From sequence record MK268344.1: 64,000 bases of DNA. One strand, written 5' to 3'. Below the pieces are notes generated by a model, which saw only the letters and a list, made by a program, of their open reading frames with translations, was not told the DNA's origin and did no database searches. Shown here one piece after another: positions 1,762 through 63,787 of this stretch. Numbering within the stretch: position 1 is the first letter of the stretch; each line of letters starts with the position of its first letter. The position numbers and the translations under genes were made by a program.

Positions 1762-3874
<2,113 letters not shown>

Positions 3875-58475: not shown

Positions 58476-58660
58476 CTTCATTCCCCGATGGGGGGGATGA
58501 AATTGCCTCAACAAATCTCGTCAAGATATAAAAGTACAAATAATAAAATTCAATCATTAAAATGAATTGAAATTATGAATAACGAATGAAATGAGTTATT
58601 CATAATTGAAAATTCTTAGACAATCGAAGATTGGCTAATCAACATAAATGATTAGAAATT
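58476..58660. repeat. Cluster of inverted repeats in AT-rich DNA (candidate origin)
   Basis: C4/G7 hairpin at 58477-58501; perfect 13 bp IR at 58571-58583/58595-58607; further IRs at 58549-58571, 58621-58633 and 58635-58655. Confidence 0.6.
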
Positions 58661-58669
58661 TAGATACAA

Positions 58670-58700
58670 AAAAACCAGCAATAAATGCTGGTTAGTTTTT
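58670..58700. terminator. Terminator
   Basis: aaccagca-ataaa-tgctggtt with flanking A and T runs. Confidence 0.75.
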
Positions 58701-58907
58701 ATTTTCTTTTGAAACTTTTTTGTTATATGCACGAACCAGAAGATCCCTTTCATTTGTTGGCATATTAAGTAGCATCTCATAGGAAGTGTTAGTGATATAG
58801 ACAGATATTTCCATTAGAGCCGCTTTGATCTCTTTAACATTCAGTTCCATATCACTAAGCACTTGTCTTATTTCTTCTGGTTTGGCAATGAGAAGCTGAA
58901 TCCGAAA
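58692..58907 (-). CDS. Unannotated gp51-like ORF in the -1 frame of the gp26-like gene (probable frameshift extension)
   Basis: Open frame FRIQLLIAKPEEIRQVLSDMELNVKEIKAALMEISVYITNTSYEMLLNMPTNERDLLVRAYNKKVSKKIKN* starts at the slippery T TTT TTC. An internal ATG at 58850 lacks a clear RBS. Confidence 0.6.
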   Translation of the reverse strand, partial: FRIQLLIAKPEEIRQVLSDMELNVKEIKAALMEISVYITNTSYEMLLNMPTNERDLLVRAYNKKVSKENKN

Positions 58908-59743
58908 AAATTAGATGGATCATAACGTAGTTTGTCAATTTCCCATTGATGGTGACACTCAGAGCATTCAACATCCATTTTATGACTAATACCAATTTCT
59001 TGTAACTCATCTGAAGTTTCACGTACTTCTTTAAGTGTATTTTTTGGTAAAGAACTTACCCATTCCGTGATAAATTCATCTTCATTAACGATTTCACCAT
59101 CAGGGGTTTCAATTTTATCAATACTTTTAACAATCATGTCAAAGTTCAATTGTGTCATTGCTTCAAACACTTCAGCAAACATTTTCTTCTTCTCTTCAAG
59201 AATTTCTTCTTCATCACCTTCCATAAAGTCAATCATTTCTGCTTTCTTTTGTTCTTGAAACATACGTTGACCGAAATCACTGTATTCTTCCCAAGTATAA
59301 GGTTTAAAGTACACTTTAAGACCATTTGAAAGTTCAACTATTGGTTGTTTTTCAAAATATGTCATAGTGTCTAGAAGATTTTGTAGATTACGGTGGAACG
59401 CACCTTCATGACCACATTCAGGACAAGTAGTTTGAATTTCATAATCTTCTTCTTTGGAAGCTACTTTAATAGCGATCATTAATTGTTCTACGTCATTAAC
59501 AAAAAGTTTACCTGCGTCATTAACACCGGGAACACAGTTCTCAATAACTTTAATTATTGCATCACCACCAATTAGTGCATCTGGTGTATTAAGCATAATT
59601 TCATCACGTGCAGAACGTGCACATACTCCTAACTTAATACTTTCTAGTACTTCTTTATCGTACTTAATTACATTGTTACTTGAAAGTTTAACAAAGATTT
59701 CTTCAATCTTAGTATATTTCGATAGTGGGTTCATTTTACTCAT
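58868..59743 (-). CDS. gp26: Baseplate hub / tail assembly chaperone (T4 gp26-like)
   Basis: NPLSKY, DEIMLNTPDALIGG, DVEQLMIAIKVAS, CPECGH, CSECHH, and DPSNFF motifs. Confidence 0.75.
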   Translation of the reverse strand: MSKMNPLSKYTKIEEIFVKLSSNNVIKYDKEVLESIKLGVCARSARDEIMLNTPDALIGGDAIIKVIENCVPGVNDAGKLFVNDVEQLMIAIKVASKEEDYEIQTTCPECGHEGAFHRNLQNLLDTMTYFEKQPIVELSNGLKVYFKPYTWEEYSDFGQRMFQEQKKAEMIDFMEGDEEEILEEKKKMFAEVFEAMTQLNFDMIVKSIDKIETPDGEIVNEDEFITEWVSSLPKNTLKEVRETSDELQEIGISHKMDVECSECHHQWEIDKLRYDPSNFFGFSFSLPNQKK

Positions 59744-59778
59744 AAGGACTCCATATAATAAATAATTCTATATAATTT

Positions 59779-59786
59779 TATTTATA
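59779..59786 (-). promoter_or_regulatory. T4-type late promoter TATAAATA (divergent with + strand TAAATA at 59759)
   Basis: Exact consensus 36 nt upstream of the ATG at 59743. Confidence 0.6.
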
Positions 59787-59796
59787 AGGAATGTAT

Positions 59797-62025
59797 ATGG
59801 CAATTGATAACAGTTATGTCTTGACGCAAATACTTCAAGAACAAACAAAAGCAAATGACCATTTATCAACCATGCGTGAACTATTGGCAGATAGTTTAAA
59901 ATTACAACAGAAACAGTCCAAAAAAGGAAATAATGGCTCCGGTGATAACGGAAGTAGTGATGATTCTAGTGGAAGCGGTGGTGGTAGTGGTGGAGATAGA
60001 CGCCGAAGAGGTGGAAGACGAGATCCACAACCAAACTCTAAAAAACTATTTAAGCAATTATTCGGTGAAATGAAAAATTTCACAAGAACCACACTTGGTA
60101 ATAGTGCCACTTCATCAAACGTAGTAGGCTCTCTAGGGACTAGCTTAGGATCTTTGGGTAGTTCCCTTAAAATGATCCCCGGCCCCGTAGGAGCGGCAGC
60201 AACAGCGTTCACTGCTATTGTTGATGTTGGTATGAAAGTCTATGATTACATGAATGAACAACTTAACATGTATAACCAATTAAACAGTGCCGGGTTAACA
60301 CTTCGGGATGGTATGTTAACTGCTCGTGCTGCTTCATCTAAGTCTTTTATGAGTTTAAATGAATTTAACGAAGCAATTCAACGTAACAGTACAACAATTG
60401 CTGCTATGGATGGTCAATACGGTGATGGTGTTGTGCATTTTGCTGATTTAATGAATTCTGTACAACAATTACAGCAAGTTAATGGTCTTTATGGTGTATC
60501 CCAACAACAATTAGCAGACATTACGGCTAAAAACTTTAAATTCCAAAAACTATATGAATCACAGAACGCATTAAGAAGTATTAATCAGTCTCAAAGTACT
60601 TCAGAATTTGTAAACCAAATGACATATCTAAGTAAAACTGTTGGTAAATCAGTAGATGAATTATTAGGTAAATTTGATTCAATGGGCGAAACACTCGATA
60701 GTACAGTAACACAGTTTGCAATGACTGATAATTGGGGATTTGACCCAGATAAAGCCGCAGAAGTGACAAAAACTATGAATAGTGTATATTCGAGCATGGG
60801 TGAAACTGGACAGATTCTACAAAAAATTAATGCTTCTAGAATTTCATTATTCCAATTACCTGATGAATATAATAACCAGTTTATGCAAGGTTATGCAGAT
60901 ATGATGGAAAGTTTGCAACGATCTGGTGTTACTGATGCTAAAGTTGTTCGTGAAACAATGGCAAAATACGTCAAAGAGCATGAAGAACAATTGAGATTGG
61001 AATTAATTGCACAACAACGGTCTGGAAATGTTCAAGCAGCAGCACTATTAACTCAAATACGAAACCAAGAAAAATTATTCAATGATAGTAACACCACAAC
61101 CAATGCACAATTAGAACAGTACACAAATAATTTTAATATGTGGATTAGTAAAACATTTACTCAACCATTTAACGAAATGTATACTAAAATGCAGTTGGGA
61201 GCTATGAAGTACTTAAGTGACCTAGCTGATCGTTCAGATGGAGCTTTTGATTTTCTTGCTAATATTGTCAAAGATGGTTATATGTATTTTAATTCATCAA
61301 TGTCTGGTATGTTTGGTGTTTTATTGGATATCCCAGCAGAGTTGAGTAAAATAATTTTGGGTGACCAATATGATAAGATAAAAGGTGCTTTTGATAATAT
61401 GATGGGGGATATTATTCAAATTCCTGCCAGAATTGGTTCCCTAATATGGGATTGGTTAACTGGTAGTGATATGGATAAATCAAAAGAGCAACTTCAAGGT
61501 ACAATTCATAATGTATTTTCTGATTTTAATAATTTTTGGGACAAACTCTCCAATGTTAAATTAAACGCAGATGATATTAAGAAACGCATGAAGGATGTTT
61601 TCGATAGCGTTAAAAAATCTCTAACTGGATGGTGGGATACCGCTAAAAGTTGGTTCAGTAGTGATGATCCAATTCCAAAAGAGGCACAAAAACAAGGAAA
61701 AAACACTCCACCAACAGCGTTGATAAATACAAATGCTACACAGGCACAGCAAACAGTTGTTGCATCAAATAAACCGCAACAACCACCAGTACTAGCGGAA
61801 CCACCGCAGTCTAAGCCTGAACGTATTTCTGAAGAAGCTAAAAAATCCGAAGAGAAAAGCCAACAACCACAAGTACAAGCTCCATTATTCAATTATGATG
61901 AAGCTATGCTTGCTCAATTAAAAGCAATATCCAGTGCATTGGATGCAACTAATAGTGGCAATCAGCAAGTGGCACAGCTTCTTCGTCAAATTTCCGAAAA
62001 TACTGAAGTAGGAAGACAAACTTAA
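59797..62025 (+). CDS. Tape-measure-like protein
   Basis: Long helical A/Q/M-rich protein next to the tail chaperone; ..LLRQI.ENT C-terminus. AAGGA RBS favours ATG 59797. Confidence 0.55.
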   Translation: MAIDNSYVLTQILQEQTKANDHLSTMRELLADSLKLQQKQSKKGNNGSGDNGSSDDSSGSGGGSGGDRRRRGGRRDPQPNSKKLFKQLFGEMKNFTRTTLGNSATSSNVVGSLGTSLGSLGSSLKMIPGPVGAAATAFTAIVDVGMKVYDYMNEQLNMYNQLNSAGLTLRDGMLTARAASSKSFMSLNEFNEAIQRNSTTIAAMDGQYGDGVVHFADLMNSVQQLQQVNGLYGVSQQQLADITAKNFKFQKLYESQNALRSINQSQSTSEFVNQMTYLSKTVGKSVDELLGKFDSMGETLDSTVTQFAMTDNWGFDPDKAAEVTKTMNSVYSSMGETGQILQKINASRISLFQLPDEYNNQFMQGYADMMESLQRSGVTDAKVVRETMAKYVKEHEEQLRLELIAQQRSGNVQAAALLTQIRNQEKLFNDSNTTTNAQLEQYTNNFNMWISKTFTQPFNEMYTKMQLGAMKYLSDLADRSDGAFDFLANIVKDGYMYFNSSMSGMFGVLLDIPAELSKIILGDQYDKIKGAFDNMMGDIIQIPARIGSLIWDWLTGSDMDKSKEQLQGTIHNVFSDFNNFWDKLSNVKLNADDIKKRMKDVFDSVKKSLTGWWDTAKSWFSSDDPIPKEAQKQGKNTPPTALINTNATQAQQTVVASNKPQQPPVLAEPPQSKPERISEEAKKSEEKSQQPQVQAPLFNYDEAMLAQLKAISSALDATNSGNQQVAQLLRQISENTEVGRQT

Positions 62026-62041
62026 TTGGAGACTTATATTA

Positions 62042-63787
62042 ATGAGTTGGAGAAGACAGATGACAACTGCGAGGTCGAAAGTATCTACCTCCAGTATAGA
62101 ACAAAATAAAGCCAGTACTGCTAAAAGTACTGGTTCTAAATCTAACTATGCTTCGTACTTACCAGTTGTTTATACTGGTTTGTCAAACCGCACAGATAGA
62201 TATCGTCAATATGAACAAATGGATCAAGACCCTGAAATAAGAACATCACTAGATATTATTGCAGACTTTTGTACTCAAAGTACTGAAGATTTTGGTCTAC
62301 CATTTAAAATTAGATATAAAGATAAAATAGGTGATTCAGAAGTAACAACTTTAGAAGATCGTTTGGAATCGTGGGCTGAACAAAACGATTTTAAAACCAG
62401 AATTTATGAAATTGTTCGTGGTCTACTAAAATACGGAGATCAGTTCTTTGTACGTGACCCAGAAACAATGGAATGGATTTGGGTAAACCCTGCAAACGTT
62501 GAAGGTGTTTTTGTTAACGAAGAAACAGGTAAAAATCCAGTAGCTTATTTTATCCGGGATATTTCTTTTAATATGCGTGATAAAGTAATGTCAAACTTGC
62601 AAATTGGTTTTGATAAAATGGCATATCCGGGATCATTACCTAATGCATTGAGTGGTTCTGCTAGTCAATTCGGTGGAATGGGTGGTGGTTATGCTAATGC
62701 TGGTAATGCACAAAGTGCTGATCCGTTTAGTATGGCTGCTGGTCGTAAAGATGTTCTTCCTGTAGCGGCAGAACACGTAGTTCACCTAACACTAAATACA
62801 GGACAAGATCCAGTGTGGCCTTTTGGTACTAGTATTCTTGAATATGTCTTTAAAGTTTATAAACAAAAAGAACTTCTAGAAGATAGTATCATCATCTATC
62901 GTGTACAACGTGCTCCAGAACGCCGTGTATTTAAAATTGATGTTGGTGAAATGCAAACTCACCAAGCAATGGCATATGTTGAAAGATTTAAAAATGAAAT
63001 CCACCAGCGTCGTATACCTTCTAATAAAGGTGGTAGTACTTCATTGATGGATGCAGCTTATAACCCATTAAGTATTTTAGAAGACTATTTCTTCCCTCAA
63101 TCTTCGGAAGGTCGTGGTAGTTCAGTCGAAACTCTACCGGGTGGTGATAACTTGGGTCAAATTGATGACTTGCGTTATTTTAACAATAAATTGATTCGTG
63201 GTTTACAAATTCCAGCTTCATATCTACCACAGGGGCCAGATGATGGCGGGGTGGCTTTATTTGGAGATGGTGCAACCCAAGCAATGACCAGTGAATTGCG
63301 TTTTAACAACCAATGTATGCGTTATCAGCGTTTAATCGCCAAAGTTTTCGATATGGAATTTAAACGTTATATGGTTAAGAATGGTTATAGTATTAGTGCT
63401 TCATCTTTTGAAGTAATCTTTAACCCACCAATTAACTTCGCTTCATATCGTAAAGCAGAATTGGATGCAAAACTAATTAGTACTTACATGTCGCTAGACG
63501 GACTTCCATATATTGCTAAACAAACAATTCTCAAGAAAATGGGCTTTGAACAAAGTGATATTGTTGAGAACGAACAAAACTGGCTCATGGAAAATCCTGA
63601 TGCATTATCATCAGCACAGAGTGGTGAACAGGCAGGATTGAAATCGGTCGGAATCGATGCTCCTAATGATCCGGGAATGGATTTAGGTATGGATGAAGAA
63701 GGTAATATGGAAAGTGCTGATAAAGAATTCCAAGATATGGTTCAAAACGATGATTTTAACCCTAATAATTTAGGCAATTCTTTCTAA
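62042..63787 (+). CDS. gp20: Portal protein
   Basis: RYRQYEQMDQDPEI, LLEDSIIIYRVQRAPERRVFKIDVG, and EDYFFPQ..EGRGSSVETLPGG.NLGQIDDLRYF motifs. Confidence 0.95.
   Translation: MSWRRQMTTARSKVSTSSIEQNKASTAKSTGSKSNYASYLPVVYTGLSNRTDRYRQYEQMDQDPEIRTSLDIIADFCTQSTEDFGLPFKIRYKDKIGDSEVTTLEDRLESWAEQNDFKTRIYEIVRGLLKYGDQFFVRDPETMEWIWVNPANVEGVFVNEETGKNPVAYFIRDISFNMRDKVMSNLQIGFDKMAYPGSLPNALSGSASQFGGMGGGYANAGNAQSADPFSMAAGRKDVLPVAAEHVVHLTLNTGQDPVWPFGTSILEYVFKVYKQKELLEDSIIIYRVQRAPERRVFKIDVGEMQTHQAMAYVERFKNEIHQRRIPSNKGGSTSLMDAAYNPLSILEDYFFPQSSEGRGSSVETLPGGDNLGQIDDLRYFNNKLIRGLQIPASYLPQGPDDGGVALFGDGATQAMTSELRFNNQCMRYQRLIAKVFDMEFKRYMVKNGYSISASSFEVIFNPPINFASYRKAELDAKLISTYMSLDGLPYIAKQTILKKMGFEQSDIVENEQNWLMENPDALSSAQSGEQAGLKSVGIDAPNDPGMDLGMDEEGNMESADKEFQDMVQNDDFNPNNLGNSF

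What the first reader, a model, noticed from the sequence alone, without database searches (positions are those of the whole stretch)
58692..58912. Probable -1 programmed ribosomal frameshift fusing the gp26-like chaperone to a hidden gp51-like domain
Seen in sequence: near the end of the gp26-like ORF the minus strand reads AAT TTT TTC, a canonical X XXY YYZ heptamer (T TTT TTC, 58910-58904). The 0 frame stops 12 codons later. The -1 frame stays open for 71 codons to a TAA at 58694-58692, just before the terminator, and encodes a protein-like helical segment (SYEMLLNMPTNERDLLVRAY) resembling small gp51-type proteins. The ORF track misses it. Established: tail assembly chaperones (lambda G/GT) use -1 frameshifts next to the tape measure gene, and this gene is adjacent to the tape-measure-like ORF. 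Inference: 291 aa and ~350 aa products, a G/GT-like arrangement in a T4-type phage.
Basis: partly seen in the sequence, partly recalled or inferred. Interest (0 to 1): 0.7.

Follow-up and report, generated by a model that had tools for sequence, protein, structure and literature searches.

The report
Conserved frameshift in baseplate-hub chaperone gene
The baseplate-hub chaperone gene of this jumbo phage almost certainly makes two proteins, a short one and a longer one made when the ribosome slips back one base on a run of T's; the same signal sits in the equivalent gene of every jumbo and marine T4-like locus I examined, whereas phage T4 itself makes the two forms from two separate genes (26 and 51).

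Summary
The gp26-like ORF (58868-59743, minus strand, 291 aa) contains T_TTT_TTC in the correct frame at 58904-58910. The -1 frame stays open for 72 codons to TAA 58692-58694, which lies at a terminator.

The heptamer alone is not unusual, but its conservation is. All 83 environmental jumbo-phage loci, 12 cultured jumbo phages and 79 of 79 usable marine T4-like loci have an in-frame T-run heptamer just before the 0-frame stop, followed by a -1 ORF of 60-95 codons. These relatives go down to 24-30% protein identity.

The -1 ORF has no stop codon in 78 loci, against 461 and 410 in the other two frames. It shows a coding pattern of substitutions upstream of any ATG. It is conserved from the two Phe codons onward and usually has no nearby start codon.

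T4 gp26 and gp51 are both PF12322 paralogs. T4 gp51 carries the equivalent C-terminal segment in one frame, so the fused product has a natural counterpart.

There are three caveats. No product has been detected. The similarity of the window's own extension to gp51 is remote. The neighbouring "tape measure" is unproven and is transcribed divergently.

I found no published report of this frameshift.

The parts
58868..59743 (-). 0-frame ORF, 291 aa: gp26/gp51-family (PF12322) baseplate-hub assembly protein. It has two CxxC pairs and ends in a conserved D-P-x-x-F-F motif followed by an unconserved tail.
   Evidence: PF12322 E 2e-29 and phrog_150 E 1.5e-30. The AF2 model has pLDDT 84 with residues 276-291 disordered. 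C107, C110, C260, C263 and F279 are invariant in 23 homologs.
58904..58910 (-). Slippery heptamer T_TTT_TTC in X_XXY_YYZ register (0-frame codons AAT TTT TTC).
   Evidence: The block TTTTTTCG is invariant in the DNA alignments. A heptamer is present in all jumbo-type loci and as T_TTT_TTN in 79/79 marine T4-like loci. Synonymous-site constraint is shown.
58692..58910 (-). -1 frame reading window: 72 sense codons (two Phe codons shared with the heptamer, then 70 more) plus TAA. It encodes a four-helix segment, the C-terminal extension of the long product. GenBank records annotate only its last 52 codons as a hypothetical protein (ATG 58850).
   Evidence: phrog_18291 E 2.6e-28. tblastn finds 76 phage records, all aligned from residue 1. 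AF2 pLDDT 80, helices 2-8, 11-38, 44-49 and 52-71. Coding signature upstream of ATGs.
58868..58903 (-). 0-frame tail after the heptamer (11 codons plus stop). It is variable in length (1-11 codons) and in sequence among relatives, and is predicted to be disordered.
58874..58895 (-). Weak candidate hairpin (5-bp stem, CTTCT/AGAAG) starting 8 nt 3' of the heptamer. It is not convincing in this phage; many distant relatives have strong hairpins at this position.
   Evidence: window copy -3.2 kcal/mol; family-wide median z -1.2 against about -0.1 in control windows, Mann-Whitney p about 5e-6; z +0.85. RNAalifold finds no common structure.
58673..58693 (-). Intrinsic-terminator-like hairpin (8 bp) followed by a T run. 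It overlaps the stop codon of the -1 frame and ends the transcription unit.
   Evidence: The same layout is seen in Hallingskeid and CBB.
59749..59786 (-). Expression signals of the gene: octamer tataaata (59779-59786) and GGAG (59749-59752), 5 nt before the ATG. Neither ATG 58850 nor GTG 58862 has a comparable Shine-Dalgarno motif in front of it.
   Evidence: The Munch record lists a ribosome-binding site for gene 276 but none for gene 275. Reading the octamer as a T4-type late promoter rests on my own knowledge.
59791..62025 (+). Context: a divergently transcribed 744-aa virion protein (phrog_14121) that may be a tape-measure-like protein. The T4-type portal gene follows (62042-63787).
   Evidence: The CBB homolog gave 29 peptides in the virion (PMC5259590). 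The RaK2 note reads 'similar to ... tail tape measure protein'. There is a weak match to the C-terminal part of T4 gp29 (E 0.002, low complexity).

Best explanation
The site is a programmed -1 ribosomal frameshift in the single gp26/gp51-family gene of this jumbo phage.

Most ribosomes read the 0 frame to its stop and make a 291-aa protein. That protein is a folded PF12322 domain with a short disordered tail. A fraction of ribosomes slip back one base while the two Phe-tRNAs sit on TTT TTC in the P and A sites. Both tRNAs re-pair on TTT codons, and translation continues in the -1 frame for 70 more codons to the TAA at the terminator. The result is a 350-aa protein with the same N-terminal 280 residues plus a four-helix C-terminal module.

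The two products correspond to T4 gp26 (short form) and T4 gp51 (long form, encoded in one frame). Both T4 proteins are listed as hub assembly chaperones (PMC3004832).

Shown: the signal, its register, the open and coding -1 frame, its conservation, and the in-frame T4 gp51 counterpart. Inferred: that slippage is ribosomal, its efficiency, that the product ratio matters, and that both forms act in hub or tail assembly.
For: (1) Register and layout in the window.

(2) Conservation.
- All 83 IMG/VR loci retrieved with a profile of homologs (27-86% identity) have an in-frame T_TTT_TTC, T_TTT_TTT or A_AAT_TTT 1-11 codons before the 0-frame stop. In 81 of them the -1 frame is open for 72-95 codons; in the other two the contig ends first.
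- The same layout occurs in Hallingskeid, RaK2 and CBB.
- It also occurs in Atu_ph07, PA5oct, SCTP-2, XacN1, Xoo-sp13 and a Vibrio jumbo phage, down to 24% identity.
- It occurs in phiM9, Melnitz-3 and Aeromonas phage AsFcp_4.
- It occurs in 79 of 79 usable marine T4-like loci.

(3) The frame switch must happen in a very short stretch. The overlap between the nearest upstream -1 stop and the 0-frame stop has a median of 8 codons, and it always contains the heptamer.

(4) The -1 frame is coding from the heptamer onward.
- There are 0 stops in 78 loci x 60 codons, against 461 and 410 in the other two frames.
- In the stretch after the 0-frame stop and before the first ATG, differences at codon positions 1/2/3 are 64/57/149.
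- Synonymous to non-synonymous changes there are 102:102, against 32:192 and 19:194 in the other frames.
- The aligned -1 pieces are conserved from residue 1.

(5) Independent initiation is implausible as the general mechanism.
- The first ATG lies at a median of codon 32.5, and at codon 20 or later in 53 of 72 loci.
- RaK2 has none for 32 codons.
- PA5oct annotates nothing there.
- In the window there is no Shine-Dalgarno motif before ATG 58850 or GTG 58862.

(6) Synonymous-site constraint. The base before the first Phe codon is T in 62/62 T-run sites, against 36% T at third positions elsewhere. The Phe pair is TTT TTC in 61/62, although TTC is only 28% of Phe codons elsewhere.

(7) A natural in-frame counterpart exists.
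- T4 gp51 is PF12322 over residues 1-201 (E 3.9e-52) and phrog_634 over 147-246.
- The -1 pieces of the T4-like phages hit phrog_634 (E 1e-12 to 1e-27). They also hit the C-terminal end (231-281 of 282) of phrog_150, which T4 gp51 covers end to end.
- T4 gp51 residues 200-243 align with positions 2-46 of a profile of -1 pieces that excludes T4 (E 7.7e-5).

(8) T4 gene 26, which has a separate gene 51 beside it, encodes the same Phe-Phe with non-slippery codons, and its -1 frame is closed.

(9) The site falls in a disordered linker after the folded domain.

(10) No in-frame fusion exists among 100 homolog clusters of the jumbo type, all 273-309 aa apart from three fragments of 165-172 aa.
Against: - No protein, peptide or ribosome-profiling evidence for the long product was available.
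- The window's own copy has no convincing downstream stimulatory structure, and no common structure is found by alignment folding. Efficiency may therefore be low.
- In the window an ATG (58850) lies 17 nt after the 0-frame stop, so some independent or coupled initiation cannot be excluded for this phage.
- Homology of the window's extension to the gp51 C-terminus is remote: single sequence E 0.014 and profile-profile probability 43%. There are no phrog_634, Pfam, NCBIfam or PDB hits.
- A relative without a heptamer exists (Cygsa01), so the module can be expressed in another way.
- The related sequences are not phylogenetically independent, so the raw counts overstate the number of independent observations.
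Confidence: 0.85

Rival explanations
1. The downstream ORF is an independent small gene, as the databases annotate it (52 aa from ATG 58850 in Munch). It would be translated by its own initiation or by termination-reinitiation after the gp26-like stop, and the heptamer would be irrelevant.
For: - Every GenBank record that annotates it treats it as a separate hypothetical protein or small 'gp51'.
- In the window an ATG lies 17 nt after the 0-frame stop.
- Cygsa01 has no heptamer, and its ATG overlaps the stop.
- Gene callers find 41-67-aa ORFs.
Against: - Conservation and the coding signature start at the heptamer, upstream of any ATG.
- The first ATG is at a median of codon 32.5, and several phages have no usable start for 30 or more codons.
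- Annotated starts differ widely between relatives, giving ORFs of 40 to 67 aa, which is what is expected if none is the real start.
- There is no Shine-Dalgarno motif in the window.
- This reading does not explain the invariant T run, its fixed register or the synonymous-site constraint.
- T4 gp51 carries the segment fused in frame.
Confidence: 0.08
2. The long product arises by transcriptional slippage. RNA polymerase would stutter on the T run and make a subpopulation of mRNAs with an altered run length, which ordinary translation would then read into the extension.
For: The conserved element is a homopolymeric run of 6-7 T, and the protein outcome would be essentially the same. The lack of a strong RNA stimulator in the window is compatible with this.
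Against: - The run is short. By my own knowledge, well-documented cases use about 9 or more identical bases.
- Ten distinct loci have only five T's preceded by AAA, still in exact X_XXY_YYZ register.
- The register relative to the 0 frame is fixed in all loci, which matters for tRNA re-pairing but not for polymerase stuttering.
- Downstream hairpins at the classical 5-8-nt spacing are enriched in the family.
Confidence: 0.05
3. The layout is an assembly error or a recent inactivating frameshift mutation in a gene that is normally read in one frame.
For: Homopolymer runs are error-prone in sequencing. In T4 gp51 the corresponding protein is in one frame.
Against: - Five independent genome records have identical layouts.
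- The same two-frame layout is found in about 180 loci from isolates and metagenomes across very distant lineages.
- There are no in-frame versions among jumbo-type homologs.
Confidence: 0.01

Closest known systems
Phage T4 gp26 and gp51 (baseplate hub assembly chaperones; Pfam PF12322, PHROG 150 and 634)
   Same: The window's 0-frame protein is a PF12322/phrog_150 member, as are both T4 gp26 and T4 gp51. It shares the two CxxC pairs and the C-terminal Phe-Phe motif. The short form ends where T4 gp26 ends. The long form has the architecture of T4 gp51: the domain plus a helical tail of about 50-70 residues. In T4, gene 26 is also transcribed divergently from the hub/tape-measure cluster.
   Different: T4 uses two separate paralogous genes and has no slippery site, whereas here one gene and two frames do the job. 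The jumbo-phage domain is about 70 residues longer. Similarity of the extension to the gp51 tail is remote. T4 gene 26 has an annotated internal in-frame start (26') that I did not examine here.
Small 'gp51 baseplate hub assembly catalyst' ORFs of cyanophage-type, rhizobial and other T4-like phages (phrog_634)
   Same: They have the same position directly after the gp26-type gene, the same -1 offset, a similar length (60-69 codons) and the same T-run heptamer at the junction. They share an M-x-P-x-x-E-R-type motif with the window's extension.
   Different: They are annotated as independent genes, and I found no frameshift annotation or paper for them. The 0-frame stop follows the heptamer at once in those phages, whereas it comes 11 codons later in the window. 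The window's piece falls in another PHROG (18291).
Lambda G/GT and P2 E/E+E' tail assembly chaperones (the conserved -1 frameshift of long-tailed phages; Xu, Hendrix and Duda 2004, cited in PMC9024508)
   Same: Each has two products with a common N-terminal part, the longer one made by a -1 slip on an X_XXY_YYZ heptamer near the end of the short ORF. Both are assembly factors for the tail or hub. The gene lies next to a candidate tape-measure gene.
   Different: There is no sequence or fold similarity to known chaperone families (no Pfam, NCBIfam or PDB hits). The gene is not between the tube and tape-measure genes and is on the opposite strand from the candidate tape measure. A role with the tape measure is an inference; it is echoed only by one GenBank product name, 'tape measure protein assembly chaperone', for a gp26 homolog.
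E. coli dnaX (tau/gamma), the textbook bacterial -1 frameshift
   Same: A tandem-slippage heptamer, and two products from one gene that share an N-terminus.
   Different: By my own knowledge, in dnaX the shifted frame stops almost at once, so the frameshift product is the shorter one. That site also has strong upstream and downstream stimulators. Here the shift lengthens the protein, and no strong stimulator is evident in this phage.

Membership tests
PF12322 / phrog_150 (T4 gp26-gp51 family) | Significant match to the family profile over its full length | tested here: met
   PF12322 E 2e-29, residues 16-280 on profile positions 4-218 of 219; phrog_150 E 1.5e-30. T4 gp26 scores 8.8e-64 and T4 gp51 scores 3.9e-52 on the same model.
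PF12322 / phrog_150 (T4 gp26-gp51 family) | Two CxxC pairs and a C-terminal aromatic Phe-Phe motif | tested here: met
   C107, C110, C260, C263 and F279 are invariant, and F280 is conserved in at least 90%, in 23 homologs. T4 gp26 ends with the same kind of motif.
gp51-type C-terminal module (phrog_634) | Sequence similarity of the -1 extension to the C-terminal segment of T4 gp51 and to the small gp51 ORFs | tested here: inconclusive
   Profile-profile, jumbo pieces (A2) against T4-like pieces (A8): E 2.4e-4, probability 43%, collinear over 32 columns. The window piece alone gives E 0.014. There is no direct phrog_634 hit and no BFVD fold hit to gp51. For the T4-like -1 pieces the link to T4 gp51 is firm.
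gp51-type C-terminal module (phrog_634) | Same position, frame offset and size relative to the PF12322 domain | tested here: met
   The module starts at the Phe-Phe motif, is offset by -1 and is 60-95 codons long in all lineages.
Programmed -1 ribosomal frameshift site | X_XXY_YYZ heptamer in the 0-frame register inside the overlap of the two frames | tested here: met
   (the overlap has a median of 8 codons and always contains the heptamer).
Programmed -1 ribosomal frameshift site | The shifted frame is protein-coding from the site onward and lacks its own start | tested here: met
   Stops, codon-position and synonymous-change counts. First-ATG statistics. No Shine-Dalgarno motif. Caveat: the window itself has an ATG 20 codons into the -1 frame.
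Programmed -1 ribosomal frameshift site | Conservation of the signal among homologs beyond what the encoded amino acids require | tested here: met
   T at the X position in 62/62 sites against a 36% background. TTT TTC in 61/62 although TTC is 28% of Phe codons. T4 keeps Phe-Phe with non-slippery codons.
Programmed -1 ribosomal frameshift site | Downstream stimulatory RNA structure 5-9 nt after the heptamer | tested here: inconclusive
   Hairpins are enriched family-wide (median z -1.2 against about -0.1; p about 5e-6; several of -14 to -21 kcal/mol). The window copy has only -3.2 kcal/mol, and no consensus structure is found.
Programmed -1 ribosomal frameshift site | Detection of the trans-frame protein product | not testable with these tools
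   No proteomic or ribosome-profiling data were at hand. The CBB virion table does not list the gp26-like protein, and the PA5oct record gives it no mass-spectrometry note.
Lambda-type tail assembly chaperones (G/GT) | Sequence or fold membership in known chaperone families | tested here: not met
   No such family appears in the Pfam, NCBIfam or PHROG hits. There is no PDB fold match for either part.
Lambda-type tail assembly chaperones (G/GT) | Gene located between the tail tube gene and the tape measure gene, on the same strand | tested here: not met
   The gene is divergent from the 744-aa candidate and is followed by a terminator.
Lambda-type tail assembly chaperones (G/GT) | Assembly factor that is absent from the finished virion | tested here: inconclusive
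   The literature gives T4 gp51 as not present in the particle and is contradictory for gp26 (PMC3004832). In CBB and PA5oct the neighbouring protein, but not the gp26-like one, has mass-spectrometry support. There are no data for Munch.

The most novel reading that the evidence does not exclude
One frameshifting gene would be the general, and perhaps ancestral, way in which the whole T4 superfamily makes both the gp26-type and the gp51-type hub chaperones. That superfamily includes jumbo Rak2-, PA5oct- and Atu_ph07-like phages, marine cyanophage-type myoviruses, rhizobial phages and some Aeromonas phages. T4 and its close relatives would be the exception, having hard-wired the two forms into two adjacent, divergently transcribed paralogous genes. 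This would give the T4 superfamily its equivalent of the lambda G/GT frameshift. It would also mean that hundreds of 'small gp51' or hypothetical ORFs in databases are mis-annotated C-terminal parts of a trans-frame protein.
Probability: 0.6. Interest if true: 0.8.

Novelty: new member of a known kind. Interest (0 to 1): 0.72.

Why it matters
By my own knowledge, programmed -1 frameshifts in tail assembly genes are a hallmark of long-tailed phages, and the T4 group has been an apparent exception.

The finding suggests that the T4 superfamily does use the same logic, in a different protein family (PF12322). It also suggests that T4's two poorly understood hub chaperones, gp26 and gp51, are the short and long forms of one ancestral product.

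Three things would follow:
- A direct and testable handle on what gp51's 'catalytic' C-terminal tail does.
- Corrected annotation of a core gene in jumbo phages and marine cyanophages, including phages considered for therapy and biocontrol.
- A large, deeply conserved natural data set for bacterial frameshift signals: a T-run heptamer with or without a downstream hairpin or an adjacent stop codon.

Tried and rejected
- Direct similarity of full-length T4 gp51 or T4 gp25 to the jumbo -1 pieces gave nothing useful. The link appeared only through the T4-like small gp51 pieces and PHROG profiles.
- Search for an in-frame fusion among jumbo-type homologs: none among 100 clusters. A profile of the extension searched against 1.84 billion representatives gave 14 hits, namely 12 small ORFs of 41-67 aa and two unrelated repeat proteins.
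- Pfam, NCBIfam, PDB sequence, PDB fold and BFVD fold searches for the extension returned nothing beyond itself and unnamed phage ORFs. The PDB fold search for the 291-aa model gave only noise.
- Consensus RNA structure downstream of the heptamer: none by RNAalifold in two subsets. The window's own fold is not better than shuffles.
- The tape-measure identity of the 744-aa neighbour was not established: there are no PDB or Pfam hits, and only a low-complexity match to T4 gp29.
- Ten literature searches (one rejected by the tool for a too-short term) found no paper describing a frameshift in gp26/gp51-type genes. The library is open-access only, so this is not proof of novelty.
- A locus search with a mixed T4-like alignment failed because it had no conserved stretch. 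It was replaced by a single-protein search.
- I did not check whether Munch has a second, distant PF12322 paralog beyond tblastn, which finds one place per genome.
Full report
**What the window is.** The 1.2-kb region around the finding is 100% identical to Salmonella phage Munch (350 kb). It is 99.7-100% identical to four other independently sequenced jumbo phages. Munch annotates the 291-aa ORF as 'base plate' (CPT_Munch_276). It annotates the last 52 codons of the downstream frame as a separate hypothetical protein (CPT_Munch_275), with no ribosome-binding site listed for it. The gene is divergent from a 744-aa virion-protein gene, which is followed by the T4-type portal gene.

**Observation.** On the minus strand the ORF 59743..58868 reads AAT TTT TTC at 58912-58904, so T_TTT_TTC (58910-58904) is in X_XXY_YYZ register. 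The 0 frame ends 11 codons later. The -1 frame read from 58910 is open for 72 codons, to a TAA (58694-58692) that lies in a terminator-like hairpin.
- The heptamer alone is not significant: it occurs 14 times in the window against 26.7 expected.
- The combination is rare. Among 44 long open frames in the window, only this one has an in-frame slippery heptamer near its end with a long open -1 frame behind it.

**Conservation in jumbo phages.** A profile of homologs (A1) retrieved 80 IMG/VR loci, in addition to four retrieved earlier with the single protein (one locus was common to both searches). Together they make 83 loci at 27-86% identity.
- All 83 have an in-frame slippery heptamer 1-11 codons before the 0-frame stop.
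- In 81 the -1 frame is open for 72-95 codons. In the other two the contig ends first.
- The 72 distinct -1 pieces, which also include the GenBank loci fetched up to then, have T_TTT_TTC in 61, A_AAT_TTT in 10 and T_TTT_TTT in 1.
- The same layout holds by direct reading in Hallingskeid, RaK2 and CBB. It also holds in Atu_ph07, PA5oct, SCTP-2, XacN1, Xoo-sp13 and a Vibrio jumbo phage, down to 24% identity.
- tblastn with the 72-residue -1 piece finds 76 phage records, each aligned from residue 1.

**Is the -1 frame really read from the heptamer?**
- The window in which the frame change must occur, between the nearest upstream -1 stop and the 0-frame stop, has a median of 8 codons and always contains the heptamer.
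- Over 60 codons after the site the -1 frame has no stop in 78 loci. The other two frames have 461 and 410.
- In the stretch after the 0-frame stop and before the first ATG, differences between related sequences fall 64/57/149 on codon positions 1/2/3 of the -1 frame. Synonymous to non-synonymous changes are 102:102, against 32:192 and 19:194 in the other frames (only 16 pairs qualified).
- The first ATG in the -1 piece lies at a median of codon 32.5, and at codon 20 or later in 53 of 72 loci. RaK2 has none for 32 codons. PA5oct has no annotation there.
- Annotated starts differ between relatives, giving small ORFs of 40 to 67 aa.
- In the window, neither ATG 58850 nor GTG 58862 has a Shine-Dalgarno motif, while the main gene has GGAG 5 nt before its ATG.
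- The 0-frame tails after the heptamer vary in length and sequence and are predicted to be disordered.
- Synonymous sites are constrained. The base before the first Phe codon is T in 62/62 sites, against 36% elsewhere. The Phe pair is TTT TTC in 61/62 although TTC is the minor Phe codon at 28%. The final C is the first base of the next -1 codon, mostly Arg, which again points to decoding of the -1 frame right at the site.

**The gp51 connection.** T4 was fetched under an accession shown in papers.
- In T4, gene 26 (208 aa) is followed by gene 25. Gene 51 lies on the other strand, divergent from gene 26 and upstream of genes 27, 28 and 29.
- T4 gene 26 encodes the conserved Phe-Phe with non-slippery codons, and its -1 frame is closed at once.
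- Both T4 gp26 and T4 gp51 match PF12322 end to end (8.8e-64 and 3.9e-52). They are weakly similar to each other (E 2e-6), so they are paralogs.
- T4 gp51 has about 50 further C-terminal residues, which match phrog_634, 'baseplate hub assembly catalyst'.
- In Sinorhizobium phage phiM9, Methylophilales phage Melnitz-3 (Kyanoviridae) and Aeromonas phage AsFcp_4 (Straboviridae), the gp26 gene ends with an in-frame T_TTT_TTN and the -1 frame is open for 60-68 codons.
- In phiM9 and Melnitz-3 these -1 ORFs are annotated as small 'gp51'. In AsFcp_4 nothing is annotated there.
- The three -1 pieces hit phrog_634 (E 1e-14 to 1e-27). They also hit the last 50 positions of phrog_150, which T4 gp51 covers from 13 to 280 of 282 and which the window's 0-frame protein covers from 2 to 232.
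- A profile of -1 pieces without T4 aligns with T4 gp51 residues 200-243, starting at the position of the second Phe (E 7.7e-5).
- T4 gp51 is therefore a natural in-frame version of 'domain plus -1 extension'.
- A further 79 of 79 usable marine T4-like loci have T_TTT_TTN followed by a 63-69-codon -1 ORF.
- One relative, Cygsa01, has no heptamer. Its small gp51 starts at an ATG overlapping the stop.
- For the window's own extension, the link to this module is positional and architectural, plus a modest profile-profile score (E 2.4e-4, probability 43%). Alone it gives E 0.014.
- tblastn with T4 gp51 finds full-length in-frame copies in 1,375 records, essentially T-even-like phages. Synechococcus phages are among the ten commonest groups for T4 gp26 but not for T4 gp51. 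I did not test mutual exclusivity genome by genome.

**Stimulatory elements.**
- The window's downstream region folds no better than shuffles. Its best local hairpin is 5 bp.
- Alignment folding finds no shared structure.
- Across 78 loci, however, the 45 nt starting 4 nt after the heptamer are more structured than three control windows (median z -1.2 against -0.11 to -0.16; p about 5e-6). Several distant relatives have hairpins of -14 to -21 kcal/mol at 5-7-nt spacing.
- In the marine set the 0-frame stop follows the heptamer at once.

**Structures.** AlphaFold gives a confident fold for residues 4-275 of the short form (pLDDT 84, pTM 0.80) and four helices for the extension (pLDDT 80). Neither has a PDB fold match. 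BFVD returns only the annotated Munch ORF and unnamed phage ORFs.

**Function.** The T4 review lists gp26 and gp51 as hub assembly chaperones. It describes gp51 as required for assembly but not present in the particle, and gp26 as possibly a hub component (PMC3004832). One GenBank record names a gp26 homolog 'tape measure protein assembly chaperone'. The 744-aa neighbour is a virion protein in CBB (PMC5259590) and has weak tape-measure hints. The G/GT comparison is therefore an analogy in logic, not family membership.

**Verdict.** The best model is one gene making a gp26-like short form and a gp51-like long form. What remains open is direct detection of the long product, its abundance, and ribosomal versus transcriptional slippage. 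None of my literature searches found a description of it.

Noticed in passing
window 58604-58646 (minus strand): An intergenic element just downstream of the terminator is 95% identical over 43 nt in the otherwise diverged Escherichia phage EJP2. It is also present in Erwinia phage Hallingskeid (L003, about 3357-3397). It is single-copy in the window, and its function is unknown.
   Followed up: partly
L090 3803-5229 (phage T4 genes 26 and 51): T4 gp26 and gp51 are both full-length PF12322 members. The two genes are adjacent and divergently transcribed, as an inverted duplication would leave them. The last residues of gp26 after the Phe-Phe resemble the start of the gp51 extension.
   Followed up: partly
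whole window: TTTTTTC is under-represented: 14 copies against 26.7 expected from dinucleotide-preserving shuffles, and all 100 shuffles had at least 14. This would fit selection against slippery runs elsewhere.
   Followed up: no
window 59791-62025 (plus strand): The 744-aa virion protein has an N-terminal helix, then a Gly/Ser/Asp-rich stretch and an Arg-rich stretch, then Gly/Ser/Ala-rich hydrophobic segments, and a Gln/Pro-rich C-terminal region. It has tape-measure-like features but no significant family hit.
   Followed up: partly
L099 1197-1379 (Pseudomonas phage Cygsa01): This phiW-14-like relative has no slippery heptamer. Its small gp51 ORF starts at an ATG that overlaps the gp26 stop, which is a third way of expressing the same module, besides frameshifting and a fused gene.
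   Followed up: partly
L101-L180 (marine T4-like loci): In these loci the 0-frame stop codon follows the T-run heptamer immediately or after one codon. The last heptamer base varies (C, A, T or G) according to the first residue of the -1 extension.
   Followed up: partly
L021, L030, L031, L034, L052, L058, L065, L091 (just 3' of their heptamers): Distant jumbo-type relatives carry strong hairpins (-14 to -21 kcal/mol, z -4 to -7) starting 5-7 nt after the heptamer. The enterobacterial Rak2-like group, including the window, has only a 5-bp stem.
   Followed up: partly
database names of homologs: gp26-like proteins are named 'ribosomal protein S27E', 'RNase P subunit RPR2' or 'Lead, cadmium, zinc and mercury transporting ATPase' in some sources. 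These names probably arise from the two CxxC zinc-ribbon-like pairs.
   Followed up: no
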